From assembly GCA_904063045.1 (NCBI GenBank), contig CAJFCJ010000028.1, positions 496,001 through 560,000 on the forward strand: 64,000 nucleotides of DNA, written 5' to 3'. Within the stretch, counting starts at the first letter, position 1; each line of letters starts with the position of its first letter. The notes under the pieces were generated by a model. The model saw only the letters and a program-made list of their open reading frames with translations, did no database searches and was not told the origin of the DNA. Origin of the DNA: Dimorphilus gyrociliatus. Its lineage: Eukaryota > Animalia > Annelida. Below are positions 1,886 to 54,100 of the stretch, in pieces. The position numbers and the translations under genes are program-made.

Positions 1886-3326
1886 GTTGCTGTAGCTGCC
1901 TTCACGATTGCACTCAGAATGAAGAAGCCGATCCAATTTATACCAGTTAAACTTTAAGCGTAACCGTTGGATGCGACAGAATAAAATATACTCAACGAAC
2001 TTTATCAAAGTTCAATATAACAATTATCTTTAATTTTTAATAGTTATAATCCACTTAAATGTTGGCCTAATCGTTGAAACATGTGTTGGGATAACGTAGA
2101 AGTTAAGAAACGTTGCTAGGTGGCACTACCTTGTATTTAAGACAATCTTAAAAGCTTTTTAAGGCACTAATAAATAGAAACAAGATAAAGTTGAATGTTT
2201 AATTTGAGAAATTGAAGTAGGCAATCGGAATCTGTAACAAGATTTAAGTCTATACAGTGCACGCTATATATATATTGCAGTATTTTGAAGAAATATGCTG
2301 TAGAGATAGCCTACAAAGTATAGTATTTTATTGATAATGTTTAAAAAAGACCTAGTTGTTAGTTGAACCAATTACTTAGATTATTAAATATGGGGCGTGG
2401 ATACTTAAAAATATTATTGTTATCAATAGAAGATAGGATATTTATGTGCTGAAAAAAAACTATACAGATAAAATATGTAGATTCGATGCATTATTATCAA
2501 GCTTAACATCATTAGACAGTCAATTTCACAGTGTCGTAGCTCTGATTAAAATGATTCAGCATTTTTGTAGTTCATCGTTTTGTCATAATTAGTAATACAG
2601 AGTCTTTGTCCGACATAATTATGGTATCATATTTTCATCTTAAGAACTTGTAAAGAAGTGGAAAGAGTTGAAAGAAAAGTAAATCTCCCACAGAAGATTA
2701 TAATTTGGATATATACGAAATATAGAAAAGCGTAAATTATTTCTTTCTATTTTCATCACATAAAGTAGAAATATATATGTTTATATATAAGAATATACAT
2801 ATATATTAAAACTTATATAGCTGTTTAGTATTACATAGCAAGCAACTGTATAAACAATCGATAATGGTATTGAATATTTTTATTAGATTTCTTTTTTTTT
2901 CTTTTTTTTATTAAAAAAAAAACTATTTATTTTCCTTCTAATATTATTTTATAAGTTATAAGTAAAAATTTCATAGAAATTGTATACTGAATTGAAGAGA
3001 TGGCAAGATTTGTGTGAAATGATGAGAAAGAGAAAGTCTTTGTGTGTGTGTGTATGTGTGTGTGTGCACAAATTAGAGAATAGATATGTCTAGAGATGAA
3101 GTAGGAAAGGAAGACAAGAGATCAAGAGAGAGAGAGAGAGAGTCAGACACACAGACAGAAAGAAAGATAGTAGGTAAATGAAAGGAGTACGGAGAAAAAA
3201 GAAAAGAAAACGAAAGTAAATATAGCATGATTGACATAGAGAAATTCTTCTATTACTACTTGCATACTCTTTTGTTTATCTTTTTTTTCAAACCTAGTTA
3301 ATTAAGATTAAATATTGATTAATTAG

Positions 3327-4476
3327 TTAGATTGACGGTGTTTCTCTAAATGTATCGTAGTTTGTCACTGAATGGGAACTAGGAGAGTTTAATGACATTT
3401 TCTCCGACTCTTCTGACGCAGTCTTTTCGGGTATAGATGATTGCAATTGTTTTCTTCGTCCTACAAAATAGTCGGGTGAACTTTCCTCCACGTCGTAACT
3501 ATCATCTTTAAAATTTGGATCATTTCGAATGAGGTAAATTATCGCTAGTATGAGACTTAGTTCAAGTATTAGTACGACAGCTAAAGTAATAATAGCAGCC
3601 GTTTTAACTGTCTTAAGTGAAAGAAGGATATTTTCATAACAGCCATGGGAATAGAATAATTCTGTTGAAGTGGAATTTTTCACCAGGAATGATTCAACAC
3701 CCATTCGGCAATGCTGAAAATAGATAGGATATGGATATATTTAAGTTTTAAGCAGACATTTTGATTTATTTCCTTACTTCATACTGAGTTTCATTCCATC
3801 CAGTTAGATTATACTTCCGACAGCAGCTTTGCGGTACGATGTAACCAGTCTTATTATAAAAGTAACTGTACAAATAGTCTCCCGTGCCATTTACTCCGCA
3901 GCACTTGAAGTTTTGTTGGGCTAAGTCAGCAACCTGTTTTACTTGTTCATCTTTCAAGTACGAAGTTCTCAAGTGTTCTTCCATTCTCATTAATTGTGCA
4001 TTAGTAACTTCAAAAGGGTATAATTCAACAAAAACTATTACAGCAATTACCAGAGCTATAACAAATCCAGCATAGGCCGAAAAAGAAATCAGTAAGAGAC
4101 GATTGTTTAAGCATAAGCCTAGAATCCCACATAATCCAGATAATATCAAGAATAGACCTTAATCGAATAAAACAAGAAAGTAACGTAAAAAGTAAATAAA
4201 CAAATTTAAATATTCAAATTAGGAGAATAACTGTAGCAATAAAGAATTATCACAAAAATCCTATTTACCACTAGATAAGCCGTGATGAACTAATCGATTA
4301 GCCAATACAGTATATACCCCAACAGCCTTCGACGACTCTTCAAAAACTTTATAAACAGTAGATGCAGACGATAAATAAACGGACGTCGAAAATATCAGAA
4401 TACCAGAGACAATGAAGGCAAAGGTCATCGTTATAACAAATACTTCATTTATACGTCCGAAGCATTTACCCGTCAT
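3327..4476 (-). CDS. Tetraspanin, ~324 aa, with extended C-terminal tail
   Basis: Exons 4269-4476, 3778-4157, 3327-3713. Four hydrophobic helices; large loop with FKCCG, PQSCC, HC and GCY (6 Cys). Confidence 0.92.
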
Positions 4477-4809
4477 AACTTTTTCCTTTAGTTTCGTTAT
4501 TTCTTTGTATATTTATATTATTATTTTAATTTATTCTTCATTAATTTCCTCTAATTAGAAAGATATACATGAAAAAAAACATCTTGTTGTTTTCATATGT
4601 ATAAATGGCGACCGACTAATCATCTGATATTACAATCTGGATGACAAAAAAAAAAAAAAAAAAAACAATAGTAATACGAAACTGCTAGTATTCTTCTATT
4701 CAATATACATGTTTAGTAGTAACATGAAAAATCATTATAGTATATACTAATAGGCCTAAAATTGTATCTTCTTTATTTAATACATACATACTGTATATAC
4801 TATATATAG

Positions 4810-4812
<3 letters not shown>

Positions 4813-4854
<42 letters not shown>
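4813..4854. repeat. (GA)21 microsatellite
   Basis: Direct reading; lies between the divergent tetraspanin and CCDC190-like genes. Confidence 0.95.
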
Positions 4855-4859
<5 letters not shown>

Positions 4860-5111
4860 TACAGAGATTATAGATATGCACGTTTTGTAATACTTTACAC
4901 TTTTTCCCCCCAAATGACTAATTAGTCAACTAAATAACATAAAAGGGGAAAATGTGTAAAACGCTCAATAATGTAAATAGCAGGTCATATTAACGAATCA
5001 ATAAGTGTTGAACTTAATCGGATTAATTCAGTAATCATCCGACAGGTGGTGTTAACAACAAAAAAGAAAACTCTAACTTAACAACAGAAAAAAACTAAAG
5101 AAACTAAAGAT

Positions 5112-6139
5112 ATGAGACGACAAAATAGATTATCTATGCTTGGTATGGAAAAGGCGTTACACAGCGTCTTTAATGCCAAGGATTCAGCGCTAGGAGTAAC
5201 ACTACTTCGAACCAACAAAAAAGAAGAAAGGTAAATTGATAAATGAGAAAAAAAGAAAGATAGACTTTGCTTTCAGAATAACACTTTGTCTTCATAATGA
5301 ACATAATTATTTTAGGTTTAATGAAAACAATACATATAGAAAGCTACTATTTCAATTTTTATTAAATAATCTCTCTATCTCTTTCTCTCCAACTCTTTCT
5401 ATCTATGTTTTCTTTATTATCAATATATAACTAACTATATATTGTTTTCAATGAAACATTTAGTCGTGCGATTGAAATATTCCTTCTCTATACTTTTTTT
5501 TTATAAACTTTTCATGCTTTTTTTTTATCATTTTTCAGATTGTTAGAAACTAAACTAAAGAAGCTTGAAAAACAAATTAAAAAGCATAATACTCATCTGA
5601 AACAGGAGAAAAATTCATTTCTTACAAAGAAACAACAAGAACCGGAACCTATTCTACTTCTTGAACATCCTAGAACACCTAGCGTAAAACGAAGACCGCA
5701 TTATATGTTACCCACTGAAAGTAGGCAAAAAACTCCATCAACACTTAAAACTATTGACATGGTTGTCAGAAAAACTAGTCGAAAAGCTAATGTTTGGCAG
5801 GCGGAAGAAATTAAATACGAAACGTTAAGTAACGTTATTCTAACTGAAAAAGAAAAGGAGAAATTAGAAGAATCATATAGACCGAGATTTAATGCTACTC
5901 CTTCTAGGCCTAGTTCTAAAGCTACTTCAGTCTCAAACGATAGTTTACCGTCAACCGTTAAAAGATTATTGAGATCAACTGGAAGGATACCGACGGCAAC
6001 GTTTATAACCGAATTGGAGGATATTCCCCTCAGACCAAAGACACCTAAATCAGTGAAATTTAGAACTGAAAAGATTAAGAAACTACAAAGTATCGGTGGC
6101 ATTAGGAAGACAGATGTTAATTTTAATAGATATAACTGA
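5112..6139 (+). CDS. Basic coiled-coil/low-complexity protein, ~240 aa, possibly CCDC190/DUF4697-like
   Basis: Exons 5112-5230 (AG|gtaaat) and 5539-6139 (tttttcag|A) join in frame. The heptad stretch NKKEERLLETKLKKLEKQIKKHNTHLKQE has E/L/L/L/H/L/E spacing like CCDC190 as I recall it; family call unverified. Confidence 0.7.
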
Positions 6140-44478: not shown

Positions 44479-46208
44479 ATGCAAATGAATAGTAGTAGAC
44501 CTTTACCAGAATCAACAGAGTCTGTAAGTATACACCTAAGTATTATAGATGAATCTTTGGAGTATTACAAATATAATTATAAATTTGTAAGAATTTAACA
44601 TAAAAAGAGTCATTAAAGGGCAATGAATTGAATTTAAAAGTTATATTTATTTTAAATACTATCTTGGAATATTGAATAGATTATTTTTTTCTCGCTCTCT
44701 TAACAGTGATAATCTTAGCAGGTTAATTTAAATAAACACTAATTTTAGTATACGAACTATGAGAGAGAGGGAGAGAGAGAGAGAAATAAAATGTAATTTG
44801 TATTACTTATCCTTACTTTTTTAAATGTTAATTAATAAAAAAATGATTTTGACATATAATACTAGTCATAGCAGCAGGATACTATTTATCAAAGTTATTT
44901 CAGATTAAAAGGCAAAATGATAATTCATTCGATTTTTCCATACAAAGGACAGTTATTTATTTAAAAAAGTGAACTAAATGCCACCACCCATCTCTTCTAA
45001 AGTAAAAAATAGGAAGAAAAACCAAACAATTGAATAAAAGAAACACCTTATTCTCCTTTAAATTTAAATTATCATGATAGAATTAATAATCCTTTTCTTA
45101 ATTCTATTGACACAACTTTTCCAATGTATCACTACTTTGTCAATGTTGTAATCTATTGAAATTCTTAATCGTGTATAAGCTGTTAACAAGTATTTAAAAG
45201 TAACATATAGATAGTATTATAAATTTTATAAATCTTATTTATATAATTTATTCATATATAATATTTATTTACATAAATAAAACATTAAAGTGTAGTCGTG
45301 AAATCTTTAATCCTTTATTCATGTTAATATAATATAAATATATCATTTTACTGAATTTTATCTTCTTAATTACTTACTTTTTGCACATAGTTTAAAATAC
45401 GTCACGAAGAGCAATTGCAGTTTCCTTTATTTTATTTCTATCCTTTCTTTATTTTTTTTGTTTGTTAATGTAATTTTATCGTGCTGATCATCGACAAATA
45501 AAATACAACAAAAGACGATAAAAACGAATCCATGCGTAATGACTATTTCTTATTGAACAGGTAACAACCGGATTATCTTTCTTGGACACTCCTCGAATAA
45601 CCTCTAACGTTGGAACTGATATGTTATTAGATGATTTTATTTTGGGTAGGAGACGTCAAGTAATAAGCTTTATTTTTCTATACTTAGCTAATGTCTTATT
45701 ATCTAATTCTTATAATAATTTGTTTGTTTGATAGAGGAGAAATAGGACTACCTTTACTCCACAACAATTACAAGCTTTGGAAGAACTATTCGCTAGGACT
45801 CACTATCCCGATATCTTTGTTAGAGAAGAACTTGCCTTTCGTATTAAACTATCAGAATCCCGTATTCAAGTTTGGTTTCAGGTAGGAGAATTTTGTAATT
45901 TTTTCAAGAACAAATATGTTCTTCTCTTTTAGAACCGTCGAGCTAAATGGCGTAAAATGACTCGCTCGAGATTAACAAGAACTTTGGGTACGTCTCCGTC
46001 TCATTCACCAGAACAATGGCGTAATCTTAATCCGCCTCAAACTCCAGCTTGGAGACACACTTTACCAGTACCTCAACCAAATTACATTTATCCTCATCTT
46101 TCCTGCTTCCAGCCAGCATTACACTTTCCTTGTCCACCGCCTCTCGAACAACCGAACGACTTAAGGACGAGAATAGAACAAAGATCCAAAGCAGCTAAAA
46201 AGGATTGA
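44479..46208 (+). CDS. PRD-class Q50 homeobox protein, CG11294/Drgx-like
   Basis: Exons 44479-44523 (a possible further exon is 44390-44430), 45561-45659, 45735-45881, 45933-46208. Homeodomain [60 protein letters not shown], preceded by LDDFILGR. Confidence 0.93.
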
Positions 46209-46595
46209 CCAATAAAATTTCACTCGAATTCTCTTTATTTCAATCTAATCTTGTTAATGTAATAATGATTAATGTGGTTTTAAACTTGTATTAATTTGTA
46301 CTTTCATTAGTTTATAAATTCAATCATTACAAGTATTTTTAATATTTTACTATACTTTATTCAACAGAAAACAAGCAAAAAAAAAAGTAACCGGTTTTTT
46401 TTATCATGTTAACAGATAGATGGCGTTGTTTATGATAACTTTTTATTGTTCAATTGGATTTCTATTTCATAAAATATTAAATGTATTACAACATTTTTAA
46501 TTTAAGTATCTTAATATAAAATATTAATACAAAATTAAAAACTATTTATAATTTAATATAAACCCCATGAGGTATACTTTTTTAAAAATATCTTT

Positions 46596-46682
46596 CTAAA
46601 TATAGTTGTCGATAGAGGGCGCTTGTACGGTTATGACGTATTGAACGTATCAGACAGTTGCCTGGCTTCACCTAGTGAGTCA
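46596..46682 (+). promoter_or_regulatory. Calsequestrin proximal promoter with muscle-type motifs
   Basis: MEF2 consensus CTAAATATAG 46596-46605, CTCF-like GATAGAGGGCGC 46611-46622, CRE-like TGACGTA, E-box CAGTTG, AP-1 TGAGTCA 46676-46682. Confidence 0.55.
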
Positions 46683-46751
46683 TTGACGATATTTCTTCAA
46701 AGAGAGTAGAAAGATTCAACAAAAAGGAACTAATTGAAAAACATTCTAATC

Positions 46752-49644
46752 ATGAATTCAATGATTAGGATTATCTTACTTTTAGCGTTTTGCTCGACGC
46801 ATTCAGCCCATGAAAGATTTTGGTATCCCTACCACGATGGAACTTCAAGAGTTGTCCGTCTGACCGCCGATACCCTTCAGAGTACCCTTCAAAATAAGAA
46901 CGTTGTCGTTGTACACTACGAATTGGCAAATGATCAAAACGAAAAAGGGAAGAGCGACACTATAAATAAAATGTTAGAGGTTGGTAATTCAAGTATTATA
47001 CCTTTAAAAAGAAAAAATCGCTTAAAGGGATGACGCCTATATATTAACGCTAAAATATCATGATTTTACATGGTATTATTGATTTTTTATGAAAACTTTC
47101 TTATATTTTACATATATATTAGTATATATACTGCTTTATCAACATACAAGAAGTAGTTTGAATTGGTGTTATCCTCTATTAATCATTTTCTTGAATATTT
47201 TATAAATCACGTAAAGGAAGAACTATCCCGTCAGCTATGACCTTGTAAGAAAAAAAAAGAACTACTATATAAACTTGTACTATCAATTATCTTAAATAAA
47301 AGTAGAAGAGTATCAGAGAGATTATCATTTTTATCACTCTAAGATGCGATATTGTACTATTTTCTACTCTTCCTATATATATATTAGTATATAATTTTCT
47401 AGTTCAATGTTAAAATTCTATCAATGAATTGACTAAGAACATAAAGAAAGGAGGAGAAAAGATAACTCTCTTTCTTCTATTATTCATCATATTTTACTTT
47501 CAACAAAATCTAAAGATTAGAAATAGTTGATTAGGATAAGAATAAAAAAGGTGATATTTTCTTATCTATTTTCTTTGCAGGGATATCTTAGTACTTATGA
47601 CGCAATTGACTGAATTTTTTTTATTATTATCAATTCTTTTATTTTTATATCTGCCTACATCTTTACAGACAACTGCGCAAGTTCTCGAAAATAATCAAGT
47701 TGTTGTTGGCGTATACAATCTTGCTGACGGAGCCCCTGCAGAAGGAGGTATGTATAGTAATCCTATAAGATTAGGCCTTTTAAAGGTTTTTAAAGTACAC
47801 ATTTTTTTATACAACTTTTAGGCTTACAACAACCAGGAGCAATAAAAGTATATAGACAAGGCAAACCATTCGATTTCAATGGTTATCATTTACCTGAAAC
47901 TTTATTGTCTTTCATTAGCAAGGTACGAAATTTTGTTTTTTTCATTATCATTTGCTTATCAGAGATTAAGTACGTGTTAACCGTTTTTTAGGTTAATTCT
48001 ACTGCGGTTACGCAAATAGCAAATAAACAAGATAAGAAACTCTTCGATAGCTACGAAGGAACAAAGGTTATTGGATTTTTTCAACAAGAAAGTGGTGCTT
48101 ATAAATTTTATGAACAAGCTGCCGAATTTTTTCATCCCAACATACCATTCTTTGTTGTTTTCGATCAACTAATCGCCAATAGCCTTCGTTGTAAGGGAAC
48201 TGGTATCATTGAGTTAGTTCTTCCATTTAGAAAGGATAGAGTACAATGTCCCCAAATTGTAAGTTTAAAACTAACATTATTTCTTTATTTTATTGACCCA
48301 TATCCATTATCTTCAATAGCCTGCCACAACTGAAGAAATAGTTAGCTTTGTTCGACAAAATAGAAGTACATCTTTACTGAAAATAACCAAAGAAAATGTT
48401 CACTCTTTATGGGGTGAAAGAGAAAACGACGTCGTCGCCTTCTATTCAGCCTCCTCTCCAGCAGGAAGATCATTTTTTAAAGTCATAAAAGGAAGAGCTA
48501 GATATTGTAATGCAACAGCAAATCCTATGCTCGCTATAGATATAGACCAATTTCCAATGGTGAGATATATTAATAGATATTCGAGAACTGTTAAATATTA
48601 AATTATACATAGTATTAACAATTTTAATAACTTCGTTTAGTTGGTCGACGTTTGGCAATCTCTGTTAAAAATTGATTTATCTCAACCTCATTTGGGCTTT
48701 ATCAACTCTAAAACAGTAAGTAACGTTTAATAATTGGTATTGTATGATGAAAACCAATTAAATTTTTATTTTCTTCATTTGTAGTATGAGTCTGCATGGA
48801 TGGATATTTCATCTTTCCCAACGTTAACACCAGTTGATCAGGGTAGAGCTGTTCAACAATGGATGCAAGATATAGACGACGGTCTGATTAAAAATGACGG
48901 TTCAGAGCCAGCAAGTAATTATTTTTTTATTAATATTAATTCAAGTAAAAGAAATGTTTAATTGGGAATCTTGTTTTCTTCTTAGCAATTGAAGGTGAAA
49001 GAGCACCGTTGAGCTGTCAGGAAAAAGTAGAAAAAGTCAAGAAAAGTGAAAAAGAAGCAAAAAGAGAAGAGGTGAAAAATACTCAATCTGTTGAAGTTGA
49101 AGCAGAGAAAATTTCAAAGAGTGAGGATAAAGAAGTTGCTGAAGAAGCCAAACAAGAAGCTGTGGTGGAAGAAATAGAAAAACAGAAGGTTGAAAAAACT
49201 CAAGCTGAAAAAAAGGAAAAGAAAGAAACAGAAAAGAGCGAGAAAGTTAAAAAACCGAAGGTAGAGGGGGAAAAGAATAATCAAAAAGAAGATCAAAAGA
49301 AGAAAGTAGAGAGAAAGAAGAAGGAGGAAAAACCGAAAAGAGAAGATAACAATAAAAAAGAAGAGCAAACTAAGAAAGAAGAAAAACCAAGAAAATCGAA
49401 AAAAGAGAATAACGAACAAAAAAGAGAAGAAGAGGAGGAAAGAGGAGAGAAACAAGTTGAGAAAGAAAGAGATAATAAGAAAAAGAAAAATTATAAGAAT
49501 AAGAATAAGAATGAGGAACGTAAAGAAGAGAAAGAAGTAGAAGAAAAACAAGATAAGAAGAATGAAAAAAAAGGAAAGAAACAGAACAAAGAAAAGAAAT
49601 TTAAAGATGAAAAGCAACAAAAGAATAAGAAATATAAGAAATAG
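46752..49644 (+). CDS. CASQ: Calsequestrin-like protein, ~592 aa, with a Lys/Glu-rich C-terminal extension
   Basis: Exons 46752-46979, 47669-47747, 47822-47922, 47992-48258, 48320-48559, 48641-48715, 48785-48914, 48986-49644 (1779 nt). Signal peptide, YPYHDGTSRV, TAQVLE, KVIGFF, AAEFFHPNIPFF, EEIVSFV, IDIDQFPM|LVDVW, IDLSQPHLG, SAWMD align along the whole calsequestrin fold. Confidence 0.9.
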
Positions 49645-49992
49645 AGAAAATCTTCGTATTTTTCCCATTTTCAATCTACCTAAATATTTTACGCAAAAAG
49701 TTTAAACTATTATTTTTTCCGTAGAAAGAATTTTATATGAATACAAAGAAATTTGAGAGAAATCTCAAAGATTTAGCATTAACAGTTTGATGGCTTTATT
49801 ATTATTATTAGATATTAGCTCATTAGGTCATTAGTAGGCCTTTGTCTTCGGATTTCTTTATTATTATCTACTTTAGATTTAATTTAAATATTTAAAATAT
49901 ATCCTTTTCAAACATCTTCATTCCATTCAATTCGATAAATAATAAAGCAATAATTGTATACGAGAGTATTTTTCATATCAACTAAAGCCGAT

Positions 49993-50608
49993 ATGAGGAG
50001 ATCTTTAGGTTCAAAAGATGATCTTCAAGTAGTTAAAGGAATGATTGAAGGCGAAGTTAAATCCCTTCAAACAGAATTAGCTAGAATGATAGGAAAGTTT
50101 AAAAGCTTAGAATCAGTTCACACAGCTACTTTAGAACAATTAAGCGAGGTATTCTACAGCATACAGTATTTATTGATTTCACTTTTTATAGTATTTTATT
50201 AGTATTTTCCCTTTTTCTATCAAGAATACAGAATTTAATTAAAAACTTTTGCAACAGTGTCGTATTGATGTAAATCAATCGGAAAATTGTTTAAAGTTAT
50301 ACGAAAAAGAAATTAATTCTTTACAAAGAATTTACGAAAATGAAGAAACAAAAATTCTTAACTTAAAAGCTGAAAATCAAGGACTTTTAGCTTTGTTTAA
50401 AATAGCCAATAACCTCTTAAAAAGTGGAAGAAATGATCAAGAATCTCAAAATTTATTGAGTAATTTAGATGAGAAAATTGCTAAAGAATTACCCAACGGT
50501 ATTCAAATATATTCAAATATAACAAATCGTTTAATTGGTAATGATAATATCAATGCAAAATTTCAATCAGAAACGACTACAGCGTCTCTAACACATTTTT
50601 TATTATAA
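49993..50608 (+). CDS. Coiled-coil coding unit, ~168 aa if stand-alone; could be an alternative calsequestrin 3' end
   Basis: Exons 49993-50148 (GAG|gtattc) and 50258-50608 (gcaacag|TGT) join in phase 0. Heptad-like runs VKSLQTELARMIGKFKSLE and LKLYEKEINSLQRIYENEETKILNLKAEN. Confidence 0.65.
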
Positions 50609-51175: not shown

Positions 51176-54100
51176 TTAACATAACATAGTTCCATCTTCA
51201 AATTTATACTTTTGCGTTAGAAAATCCAATCGATCGTAATTTTCGTTAGGATTTAATTTTCCCTGACTTTTCTTTAAACTATTAAATGAACTCTTTCGAC
51301 TTAAATTAGGCCCGCGATTAGAATGTCTCCCAGAACCAGGTCGATTCTTTGGTCCCCAAGTATGATACCTGGAACTATAATCCGTTTTTGGATAGACTTT
51401 AACTTGTGGAGTATTAGTAGCCCTTTCGGGAGGAATTGAACCATTTTCAGATCTTCGTTTTTTGGGTATGTCCATTGATTCGTAATGATTGTCCTCGGTT
51501 TTCTTTTTCTTTTGAAGGTAGATAGCTTCCTTAGGAGTTTTTATTGTATTCTTAGTAAATTTATTCTTTAAGAATTTATACAACCAAATTAGACTTGCAC
51601 CCGAAACTAATCCCAATAGGAAACATAATAGTCCAACTATGGCCAAATGATAAGACTTTAATTTAAATTCTTCCTGCTTTAGTTCTGTACGGATATATTG
51701 TCCACAATTTTATAAACTTATTAATCATTTCTCTTTTATTTTTTAGTATTGAAATAAACAAACCGGAAATAGTTGGTCTAAAACACATTTTCTCTTCTAT
51801 AGAACTTCCGTCACAGCTATATGAAAATGGTAATGCGCAATTCCTCTTACGAAATTTTAGCTGATTTTCATTACAGTCTGACCAATGGGACCATTCGTTC
51901 CAACCATCTAAGAGATATATTTTAGAAATATGTAAATCAATTTTAATACTTGTATTTAGGCTGTTGAACCTTGACATGGAAAAATTTCGCAAGATTCTCT
52001 CGTCATAGCGGAACCTTGGCATTCGGATGATGGTGTACCATCGGCAAATTGGCACGATCTCGTACGAATTTTATAGCCTTCGCCGCATGTTCTCGTACAA
52101 TCCGAATAGCTTGACCAACAAGACCATTGCGGATGGCACGAGTGGATATTGCAAATCCTTTTCTCAACAGCGTGGCCGAGACAAAGATTATCGGATGTTT
52201 TACATCTTCTATGTCTTAACTGTTCACCGCCACCACACCTCTCCGTACAATACGACCACTCCGACCAAGTTTCGTACTGGTCAGTTGCCCTTCGACTTTC
52301 AACTCTGCCATTCTTTTCCGAAACTGTTTAAAAGCAAACGGCGATTGATTAAAACTAGTAAACAGAAAAAAACTACAGATTCGGTTTCTTGCCACAAGAT
52401 GGCGTTATTGGCAGATTAAAGCAAATTATTAAGAAACATATTTTACATTATGTGATCAGCAGATAGAAGCAGAAAAAGGCTAATAAGAAAATGAAAGTTG
52501 TTGAAAATCAAGTTAAAATCATATAAGCCAATTTGTCCTAGTTATAGAGTATATATTAAAAGTTTTATAGCTCTTAGAAGCGCTCTCCACTTTTCCTTTT
52601 CAGTTATCTCTTATCACTTAATTTTTTAACAAGTATACTATCTAACATAAGATAACAATAAAAAGCAGAGAGCGCCGTCTACAGTGCGACGAAAGTTTAT
52701 GTTTGTTTTGTTTTTGTATTTTTTTGTATTATTTTCTCTCAATCCCCAGAAAAGTAAACCAACCTTCATCGTCATAAACTTCGCTACTTTCTGTATAATT
52801 TAATAGATAAACTTTTTCAATTATAGGTAAAAAAAAAACAATTATCATAATATAGAAAATACTGTGTACAAAGCAAAAATAAGTAAATAAATAAATAAAT
52901 AAGAAAGGGAAGATAAAAATATAGATCCTACCATAAAATTGACATTTCCGGTTAATGCATCTTCGTCTTTCAATTTTTGGTTTTGATAATTTAATATTGT
53001 ACGATCTATCAACGTTCGCTTTGCAGGCGTATCGATATCTCATTTGCTCTTTTGTACCGTCAATAGACATGTTCGAAATTAGCCAACTTGTCCATTTTGT
53101 ATATTTTTTGAAAGCTATAAAAGAGAGAAATATTTAAAATATTTATAGGAGGAAAATCAAAATTTTTCCCGCTCAAAGGAAAATAAAATTAGGCTTATAA
53201 CAGCTGGCACATAATTAATAGCGGATGAGGGCGACCTTTTTTTATTGAAGAATACAAATAGTATTGGAGAACTTATAGTCGTTATGAATTGAAAAATAAG
53301 AGCATTCAAAACTCTTTCTATCCCTTTCAGATAGTGAATTACAGTACGACAAATATATGTCTTTTTTTATTATTTAAGTATATATATTAAGAAGAAGAAA
53401 TAGACCTCTGCAGGGTGAACTATTACATGATCTCCATTCTGTTCTATCACCAATGCAAGGTAATCTATTGGACGAGCATCTTCTATATCTTTTTTGAAAA
53501 CCTCCGTTACATTGTTTTGAACATCGGCCCCATTCGGACCAATTATGCCAACTTGCTCTTTCCATTTCTATTTTAAAGTAAAGAGAATTTTTTTTTTAAA
53601 AAAAAAATGCTATATATTTTAATTTAATAAAATTTTTCCTTACTCCTATCAGTTTTGGTTTTACAACGTTGCAGACAAGCTTGCTTTTCAACTGATAACC
53701 CGAAGCAAGAAGTACCACCAAACTTTGGTGATGGATTCGAACATGTTCTCTTTCTACTTCTGTGGCCTTGTTCGCAAGATTTTGAACAACCCGACCATTC
53801 ACTCCATATTGACCAACGTCCATCAACTTAGAAAACATAAACGCAAAAATATAAAATTGATGGAATTGAACTTAAAAGTAGGCCTAAATCATACATATGC
53901 ATAATATACAGTATTGTAGCTAAATGTAAACAATGTATTATATATATAGTATATATTGTCTATAGCGTATACATTGAGAATATGCAGCACATATTTTAGG
54001 AAAGGTCGGGTAAAAAAGTGTATAGGCTTAAAATCTATAACGGTTTCCGTTGGTTCTTTTTGTGATTAGATAGTGCAAAAAAAAAAAAAAAGTCGGTTCG

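What the first reader, a model, noticed from the sequence alone, without database searches (positions are those of the whole stretch)
46752..49644. De-acidified calsequestrin fused to a triadin/junctin-like KEKE tail
Seen: a full three-thioredoxin-fold calsequestrin core, but by manual count only about 40 D+E versus 35 K+R in about 354 residues (about 11% acidic, near neutral) and no poly-Asp tail. A phase-matched last exon (48986-49644) adds about 219 aa, with about 70 Lys, 54 Glu, 8 Arg and 6 Asp in its last 211 residues (net basic, alternating K/E), ending KKYKK. Established: vertebrate calsequestrins are highly acidic Ca2+ buffers anchored to RyR through the luminal KEKE regions of triadin and junctin; triadin is not known outside vertebrates. 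Inference: this protein is a poor Ca2+ store and instead acts as a self-contained anchor or scaffold, binding an acidic paralogue or RyR, which would be an undescribed invertebrate junctional-SR design.
Basis: partly seen in the sequence, partly recalled or inferred. Interest (0 to 1): 0.82.

Follow-up and report, generated by a model that had tools for sequence, protein, structure and literature searches.

The report
Calsequestrin-family gene with Lys/Glu tail
A small marine worm makes a real, spliced and well-transcribed calsequestrin-like protein that ends in a 219-residue lysine/glutamate tail. The low acidity of its body is normal for invertebrate relatives, the tail only resembles triadin or junctin in composition, and its role is untested.

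Summary
An 8-exon gene at 46752-49644 (+) encodes 592 aa: a calsequestrin-family core of 373 aa (40 D+E, 36 K+R) and a 219-aa tail (70 K, 56 E) ending KKYKK. Spliced contigs of a public run support all seven introns, including 48914>48986, and show no cover of intron 7.

Two relatives keep the tail. One is about 94% identical in DNA (tail dN/dS about 0.1, stop kept). The other is about 79% identical, with the same exon structure and a K/E tail that differs by indels.

- "De-acidified" has the polarity wrong. Nemertean, chelicerate, coral, placozoan and sponge calsequestrins have equally neutral cores.
- Most of those relatives end in a KDEL-type signal (xxEL). This protein has none.
- The tail has no detectable homology to triadin or junctin and no membrane anchor.
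- The tail meets the formal KEKE definition. AlphaFold2 predicts two long helices of about 80 residues joined by a hinge.

My best reading is a lineage-specific expansion of the family's variable last exon, which may hold the protein in the ER/SR lumen. Secretion is not excluded.

The parts
46752..46979 (+). Exon 1. It holds the start codon, the signal peptide (about aa 1-20, 46752-46811) and the conserved N-terminal arm motif YPYHDGTSRV.
   Evidence: weak PF01216 match on aa 7-63; run X3 has a contig over 46709-46886, and run X4 has the spliced junction 46979>47669.
47669..47747 (+). Exon 2.
   Evidence: Junctions seen in runs X1, X2 and X4.
47822..47922 (+). Exon 3.
47992..48258 (+). Exon 4, in thioredoxin-like domain II. 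It holds the N-glycosylation sequon N138 and cysteines C203 and C222.
   Evidence: PF01216 at 3.6e-10. PDB CASQ1/2 matches..
48320..48559 (+). Exon 5, spanning domains II and III. It holds the sequons N239 and N289 and cysteine C288.
   Evidence: PF01216 at 1.4e-7..
48641..48715 (+). Exon 6.
48785..48914 (+). Exon 7, the end of the calsequestrin core (...QQWMQDIDDGLIKNDGSEPA).
48915..48985 (+). Intron 7 (71 nt, GT..AG). It is removed in the transcripts seen, with no contig cover in runs X4 or X2.
   Evidence: tables 2, 5 and 8.
48986..49644 (+). Exon 8, the 219-aa Lys/Glu tail plus the stop codon (TAG at 49642-49644). The DNA is 83% purine and made of degenerate short repeats.
49015..49017 (+). 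Codon of Cys384 at the start of the tail (PLSCQEK). The relative keeps it as PLACQEK.
49015..49245 (+). Predicted long helix 1 of the tail (tail residues 10-86, pLDDT about 82-94).
49246..49398 (+). Predicted flexible linker of the tail, low in confidence and containing prolines.
49399..49638 (+). Predicted long helix 2 of the tail (tail residues 138-217, pLDDT about 87-97).

Best explanation
This is a genuine, constitutively spliced and well-transcribed gene for a secretory-pathway protein of the calsequestrin family. The genome is probably that of the dinophilid annelid Dimorphilus gyrociliatus.

**Core.** Its three-thioredoxin-fold core has an ordinary charge, as in almost all non-chordate family members. 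It was never acidified, rather than de-acidified. It is unlikely to buffer Ca2+ in the vertebrate way, which depends on charge neutralisation and polymerisation.

**Tail origin.** In the relatives, the stretch after the core is a short, variable, often charged linker that usually ends in a KDEL-type ER-retrieval signal. In this lineage that last exon has grown into a 219-residue Lys/Glu polyampholyte, probably by slippage of purine-rich repeats, and the retrieval signal is absent.

**Tail shape and constraint.** The tail is predicted to form two helices of about 80 residues, which would each be roughly 12 nm long, joined by a flexible hinge. It starts at a conserved cysteine. Selection keeps its composition, frame and stop codon, but not its exact sequence.

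**Mechanism (inferred, not shown).** The basic, multivalent tail holds the protein in the ER/SR lumen. It would do so by electrostatic binding to acidic luminal partners or membrane surfaces, taking over the job of the lost xxEL signal. In this it would be analogous, not homologous, to the luminal KEKE region of triadin and junctin.
For: **Gene and splicing**
- The gene model is phase-consistent.
- Spliced contigs in run X4 support all seven introns, with zero cover of intron 7.

**Family**
- Pfam and PDB matches and full-length blastp cover of the core.
- In the tree the protein groups with homologues P0006 and P0010, support 85/89.

**Neutral cores and xxEL endings in relatives**
- Found in Lineus, Galendromus, Centruroides, Trichoplax, Pocillopora and Sycon homologues, all of which are PF01216 members where scanned.
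- The window protein ends NKKYKK and has no CxxC motif.

**Tail conservation**
- The 94%-identical relative in run X2 shows 18 synonymous against 12 non-synonymous changes in the tail, giving dN/dS about 0.11.
- That relative also has an in-frame 3-nt deletion, and its stop is kept (TAG>TAA).
- The 79%-identical relative L001 has the same 8 exons. Its core is 87% identical and its tail about 54% identical, with indels but the same K/E make-up.

**Tail structure**
- AlphaFold2 predicts two long helices with pLDDT about 90 and pTM 0.25.

**Tail origin**
- The exon is built of degenerate purine repeats.
- Short K-rich stretches precede xxEL in homologues P0010, P0012 and P0026.

**Background**
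- Vertebrate calsequestrin also lacks KDEL and is retained by oligomerisation (PMC2196414, abstract).
Against: - No localisation, binding or Ca2+ data exist for this protein.
- Without an xxEL signal the default fate of a soluble secretory protein is export.
- The charge pattern of the tail does not differ from composition-matched shuffles. No specific binding or single-helix pattern is therefore demonstrated.
- The AlphaFold2 model was made from a single sequence.
- The whole spliced protein could not be folded or searched as one piece, because it has no reference.
- The genome could not be searched for paralogues or partners.
Confidence: 0.5

Rival explanations
1. The protein is a self-contained junctional-SR anchor. 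Its KEKE tail binds an acidic calsequestrin paralogue or the luminal loops of the ryanodine receptor, and so replaces triadin and junctin.
For: - The tail meets the formal KEKE definition over nearly its whole length (definition from PMC3427183).
- A triadin KEKE peptide binds and activates RyR1 from the luminal side (PMC3427183).
- The tail is under purifying selection.
- An earlier scan note places a ryanodine receptor gene in this genome (unchecked).
Against: - There is no homology to triadin or junctin and no membrane anchor, so the protein cannot itself fix anything to the junctional membrane.
- No acidic paralogue is known. One survey reported single calsequestrin genes in invertebrates (PMC7582152).
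- A neutral core is not special to this gene.
- Muscle expression has not been shown.
Confidence: 0.15
2. The protein is a secreted, neofunctionalised calsequestrin-like protein. Having lost the ER-retrieval signal, it is exported, and the Lys-rich tail binds polyanions such as sulphated mucus, matrix or egg-capsule material.
For: - It has a signal peptide, three N-glycosylation sequons and no xxEL ending, whereas most homologues end in xxEL.
- The contig depth is very high (about 2100-5700) in a run of only 60 million letters. That would suit a gland product, although contig depth is a poor measure of expression.
Against: - Vertebrate calsequestrin (PMC2196414) and homologue P0006 also lack xxEL, and vertebrate calsequestrin is nevertheless retained.
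- The core is under strong constraint (dN/dS 0.05) and keeps the N-terminal arm motif of calsequestrins.
- No secretome or in-situ data are available.
Confidence: 0.2
3. The tail has no specific function. It is a tolerated low-complexity expansion, produced by slippage in an AT-rich genome, on an otherwise ordinary ER calsequestrin-like protein.
For: - The window is 26-33% GC.
- The exon is 83% purine and made of degenerate short repeats.
- The tail changes fast, with many indels (54% identity against 87% for the core).
- Other scan notes report long low-complexity tails on other proteins of this genome (unchecked).
Against: - dN/dS is 0.11-0.17, far below 1.
- The reading frame, the stop position and the K/E make-up are kept across relatives.
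- The tail start and Cys384 are conserved.
- The tail is constitutively included in transcripts.
Confidence: 0.15

Closest known systems
Non-chordate calsequestrin-family proteins (Pfam PF01216), for example Lineus longissimus XP_064650789.1, Trichoplax B3RTQ7 and Pocillopora XP_058960296
   Same: - The three-domain calsequestrin core aligns over its full length at about 30-33% identity.
- The core charge is near neutral.
- There is a signal peptide and the N-terminal arm motif.
- A variable charged stretch follows the core.
   Different: - Their tails are 14-90 aa long, or carry an Ig domain in chelicerates, and mostly end in xxEL.
- Here the tail is a 219-aa K/E polyampholyte ending KKYKK, with no retrieval motif.
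Vertebrate calsequestrin 1 and 2
   Same: - Same fold family.
- No KDEL-type signal.
- Soluble and carried in the secretory pathway.
   Different: - Vertebrate proteins are strongly acidic with an Asp-rich tail. This rests on general knowledge and on PMC7582152.
- Here the core is 10.7% acidic and the tail is net basic.
Luminal KEKE regions of triadin and junctin
   Same: - A Lys/Glu-rich, net basic stretch that would lie in the lumen.
- It meets the formal KEKE criteria (PMC3427183).
   Different: - No sequence homology and no Pfam PF05279 match.
- No transmembrane anchor.
- It is attached to the calsequestrin core itself.
- It is predicted helical, whereas the triadin peptide was found disordered (PMC3427183).
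Charged single alpha-helix (ER/K) domains
   Same: - Long helices rich in K and E.
- Predicted at high confidence without tertiary contacts.
   Different: - Opposite-charge pairs at i/i+4 are not enriched over shuffles.
- These domains are known mainly from cytosolic proteins. This point rests on my own knowledge.

Membership tests
Calsequestrin (Pfam PF01216) | Profile match over the three thioredoxin-like domains | tested here: met
   Exons 4 and 5 each exceed the gathering score, and exon 1 matches weakly. The spliced core aligns over residues 1-373 to full-length PF01216 members, with E from 1e-65 to 1e-69.
Calsequestrin (Pfam PF01216) | No CxxC redox site in the thioredoxin folds | tested here: met
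   The 592 aa contain no CxxC motif.
Calsequestrin in the functional sense (high-capacity Ca2+ buffer) | Very acidic composition and an Asp-rich C-terminal tail | tested here: not met
   The core is 10.7% D+E with net charge -4. The tail is net +17 and has no poly-Asp run. Most non-chordate homologues also fail this feature.
Calsequestrin in the functional sense (high-capacity Ca2+ buffer) | Ca2+-dependent polymerisation and low-affinity, high-capacity Ca2+ binding | not testable with these tools
   This needs biochemistry.
Triadin / junctin (Pfam PF05279, Asp-B-Hydro_N) | Sequence homology to the family | tested here: not met
   The tail has no Pfam hit at E<=1. The word search found no homologue, and the atlas search gave no usable hit.
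Triadin / junctin (Pfam PF05279, Asp-B-Hydro_N) | Single-pass membrane anchor | tested here: not met
   The only hydrophobic stretch is the N-terminal signal peptide. The tail is 64% charged residues.
Triadin / junctin (Pfam PF05279, Asp-B-Hydro_N) | Luminal KEKE motifs: more than 12 aa, more than 60% K plus E/D, no W/Y/F/P, and no run of five like charges | tested here: met
   Seven segments cover most of the tail. The definition is taken from PMC3427183.
KDEL-type soluble ER residents | C-terminal xxEL retrieval motif | tested here: not met
   The protein ends NKKYKK. Sixteen of the roughly 19 non-vertebrate homologues with an intact C-terminus end in xxEL.
Charged single alpha-helix (ER/K) domain | Long isolated helix with patterned i/i+4 salt bridges | tested here: inconclusive
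   Long helices are predicted with pLDDT about 90. The charge pattern is not different from shuffles.

The most novel reading that the evidence does not exclude
A calsequestrin-family protein carries its own KEKE-type luminal tether. It would replace both the ancestral KDEL-type retrieval signal and the separate triadin/junctin anchors of vertebrates. That would be a convergent, one-polypeptide way to concentrate a luminal protein at Ca2+-release sites in an annelid.
Probability: 0.12. Interest if true: 0.7.

Novelty: new variant of a known kind. Interest (0 to 1): 0.4.

Why it matters
**Retention.** If the tail really keeps the protein in the lumen, it would be a third way for this family to stay in the ER/SR. 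The other two are the xxEL retrieval signal of most invertebrate members and the polymer condensation of vertebrate calsequestrin. It would also show that KEKE-type electrostatic tethering arose more than once.

**Evolution of the family.** Neutral, xxEL-bearing calsequestrins occur from a sponge to chelicerates. This suggests that the acidic Ca2+-sponge form is derived. The function of the ancestral neutral form is then an open question. PMC7582152 partly noted this already.

Tried and rejected
- **Whole spliced protein.** It has no reference, so Pfam, structure prediction and database searches were run exon by exon. Whole-protein comparisons were done only in local scripts.
- **Profile word search (A1).** An alignment of three homologues plus the window's exons found only 8 proteins. 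It did not return the window's own protein, but it gave P0059, which led to the relative's locus.
- **Word search with the tail.** No hit.
- **Word search with P0010.** A wide survey of spiralian tails was therefore not achieved.
- **Atlas search of the tail.** No usable hit.
- **Charge patterning.** The test for single-helix charge patterns was negative.
- **Literature.** Searches for annelid or spiralian calsequestrins found nothing relevant. One search was badly framed.
- **Gene fusion with a downstream gene.** Rejected. The relative has the same short intron and tail exon, and the tail sits where the family's own C-terminal stretch lies.

Full report
**The gene.** Reading 46500-50000 and translating all frames gives an 8-exon model on the + strand. 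Every intron has GT..AG ends and the phases are consistent. The exons are 46752-46979, 47669-47747, 47822-47922, 47992-48258, 48320-48559, 48641-48715, 48785-48914 and 48986-49644. The product is 592 aa.

Composition:
- The first seven exons give 373 aa with D21 E19 K21 R15, which is 10.7% acidic with net charge -4.
- The last exon gives 219 aa with K70 E56 R9 D6, net charge +17, ending KKYKK.

Other features read directly from the sequence:
- a hydrophobic N-terminal signal peptide;
- three N-x-S/T sequons, at N138, N239 and N289;
- five cysteines and no CxxC motif.

**Transcription and splicing.**
- One public run, X4, is labelled with the window's own organism code. Sixteen of the 19 contigs laid are at least 99% identical.
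- X4 holds spliced contigs for all seven introns. One contig crosses 48914>48986 with 38 nt on its shorter side.
- The depth in bin 48922-49022 equals 5666 x 37/101 in X4 and 11.6 x 37/101 in X2. This means intron 7 itself has no cover in either run.
- The tail-less product that intron retention would give, with a stop near 48958, is therefore not seen.
- Contig depth in X4 is very high for a 60-million-letter run, but contig depth is a poor measure of expression.

**Family.**
- Pfam Calsequestrin (PF01216) matches exon 4 (3.6e-10) and exon 5 (1.4e-7) above the gathering score, and exon 1 weakly.
- PDB CASQ1/CASQ2 chains match exon 4.
- A search of 1.84 billion cluster representatives with exon 4 gave 39 hits, all at most 48% identical.
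- Local blastp of the spliced core against the fetched hits covers residues 1-373 at about 33% identity, with E from 1e-65 to 1e-69.
- Those hits that were scanned are themselves full PF01216 members.
- In a maximum-likelihood tree the window protein and its relative sit on a long branch. They group with two unnamed homologues, one from a metagenome contig (P0006) and one from a Logan run assembly (P0010), with support 85/89.

**Is the core "de-acidified"?** No.
- I aligned 20 homologues and counted charges over the core.
- Seventeen of the 19 homologues other than the window protein have 8-13% acidic residues and a net charge between -5 and +17.
- Those with named sources are Lineus longissimus (+8), the mite Galendromus (-1), the scorpion Centruroides (-5), Trichoplax (+7), a Pocillopora-type coral (+10) and the sponge Sycon (+11).
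- The clearly acidic exceptions are one unnamed metagenomic protein (P0026, 30% acidic) and the vertebrate sequence. P0009, which carries an Asp-rich repeat array, also counts as acidic in this alignment.
- Near-neutrality is therefore the common, probably ancestral, state.
- This agrees with a remark in PMC7582152 that pre-duplication calsequestrins have few acidic residues in the C-terminal domain.

- About 16 of the 19 non-vertebrate homologues with an intact C-terminus end in an ER-retrieval-type motif: RDEL, KEEL, KQEL, KTEL, RTEL, KDEL and similar.
- That such variants work as retrieval signals rests on general knowledge and was not tested here.
- The window protein has no such ending.
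- Short Lys-rich stretches sit just before xxEL in P0010, P0012 and P0026.
- Chelicerate members instead carry an Ig domain before KTEL.
- The part after the core is thus the plastic part of the family. In the alignment the tail exon starts exactly where that part starts.

**Is the tail real coding sequence under selection?** Purine-rich DNA is open in several frames, so an open frame alone proves little. Three further lines of evidence support it.

1. In-frame splicing.
2. A relative about 94% identical in a marine metatranscriptome (run X2):
   - It has a contig from 48986 to 49680.
   - Its listed differences in the tail are 18 synonymous and 12 non-synonymous, giving dN/dS about 0.11 by Nei-Gojobori counting on an incomplete list.
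   - It has a 3-nt in-frame deletion, and its stop is kept at the same codon (TAG>TAA).
3. A more distant relative, locus L001, about 79% identical in DNA:
   - It is a Logan contig reached through the exon-1 ORF P0059.
   - It has the same eight exons and phases and the same upstream homeobox gene.
   - Its core is 87% identical (dN/dS 0.05).
   - Its K/E tail aligns at about 54% identity with several indels (dN/dS about 0.17, with dS saturated).
   - It keeps the tail start PL(S/A)CQEKVEKVKK with its cysteine.
   - The contig ends inside the tail, so the relative's C-terminus is unknown.

**Nature of the tail.**
- It has no Pfam hit at E<=1, so no match to the triadin/junctin family.
- It has no homologue by word search and no atlas hit.
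- It has no hydrophobic segment.
- It meets the formal KEKE definition over seven segments that cover most of it (definition from PMC3427183).
- AlphaFold2, from the single sequence, predicts two long helices at tail residues 10-86 and 138-217 with pLDDT about 90.
- A low-confidence, proline-containing linker joins them, and there is no compact fold (pTM 0.25).
- Opposite-charge spacing does not differ from composition-matched shuffles. No specific salt-bridge or zipper pattern is demonstrated.
- The DNA is 83% purine and built of degenerate short repeats, including a 54-nt unit repeated twice. This points to growth by slippage.
- It is the only such tract in the window.

**Organism.**
- Earlier notes of this scan name the genome as Dimorphilus gyrociliatus. 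I did not verify this.
- Six of the seven introns measure 61-81 nt, which fits the published median intron of 66 bp (PMC7854359).
- The RNA holders are marine, coral and invertebrate metatranscriptomes.

**Interpretation.**

Shown:
- A real calsequestrin-family gene with a constitutive K/E tail that is constrained in composition.
- A neutral core that is typical for the family outside chordates.
- Absence of the usual retrieval motif.

Inferred:
- The last exon expanded in the dinophilid lineage and the xxEL signal was lost.
- The basic, multivalent, rod-like tail keeps the protein in the lumen by electrostatic binding. In this it is analogous to the triadin/junctin KEKE region, but not related to it.
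- I put about 0.3 on that specific mechanism and about 0.9 on the descriptive part.

Rivals:
It has no membrane anchor, no known acidic partner and no tissue data.
- A secreted product. This is the default fate without xxEL, although vertebrate calsequestrin is retained without it (PMC2196414).
- A functionless low-complexity expansion. The selection signals argue against it.

**Novelty.**
- I found no description of a calsequestrin with a long K/E tail.
- My survey of invertebrate tails rests on about 25 homologues only, because two word searches failed.
- It is a new variant of a known family, of moderate interest until localisation or binding is tested.

Noticed in passing
window 45546-46208 (+); L001:631-819: A paired-like homeobox gene lies just upstream of the calsequestrin gene (the ORF reads ...[14 protein letters not shown]...RIQVWFQ). 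The relative's contig keeps the same neighbour, about 77% identical in DNA, with Pfam Homeodomain recorded for the called gene.
   Followed up: partly
P0003, P0005, P0007, P0015, P0017, P0018, P0035: Chelicerate and similar calsequestrin-family proteins carry a C-terminal immunoglobulin domain followed by KTEL or KEEL. Ig_3 and I-set match in the Centruroides protein. PMC7582152 states that arthropods have no calsequestrin gene, yet NCBI names such proteins in a mite and in scorpions.
   Followed up: partly
P0023: The calcareous sponge Sycon ciliatum has a PF01216 calsequestrin-family protein that ends in RTEL. PMC7582152 reported no sponge homologue.
   Followed up: partly
P0009: In one representative of unknown taxon, the third calsequestrin domain is replaced by a long array of Asp-rich repeats of the thrombospondin type-3 kind (DGDGIPNDED...). 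It may be a different route to Ca2+ binding, or an assembly chimera.
   Followed up: no
P0026: An unnamed metagenomic calsequestrin has a 30% acidic core (net -84) and still ends in KKEL after a Lys-rich stretch. Strong acidity and ER retrieval can therefore occur together.
   Followed up: no
window 49015-49017 (Cys384) and 48515-48517 (Cys288): The cysteine at the very start of the tail is conserved in the relative. It could pair with Cys288 or form a disulfide-linked dimer at the base of the first long helix.
   Followed up: no
window 47147-47655 (intron 1): Run X4 has a 510-nt contig inside the 689-nt first intron, at about 1-2% of the exon depth. It could be pre-mRNA or a separate small transcript. 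This intron is about ten times longer than the other six.
   Followed up: no
window 49954-50608 (+) and 51176-52055 (-): Downstream lie ORFs of a coiled-coil-like protein on the + strand. On the - strand there is a thrombospondin type-1-like ORF (WSHWSDC) and a small ORF for a transmembrane protein.
   Followed up: no
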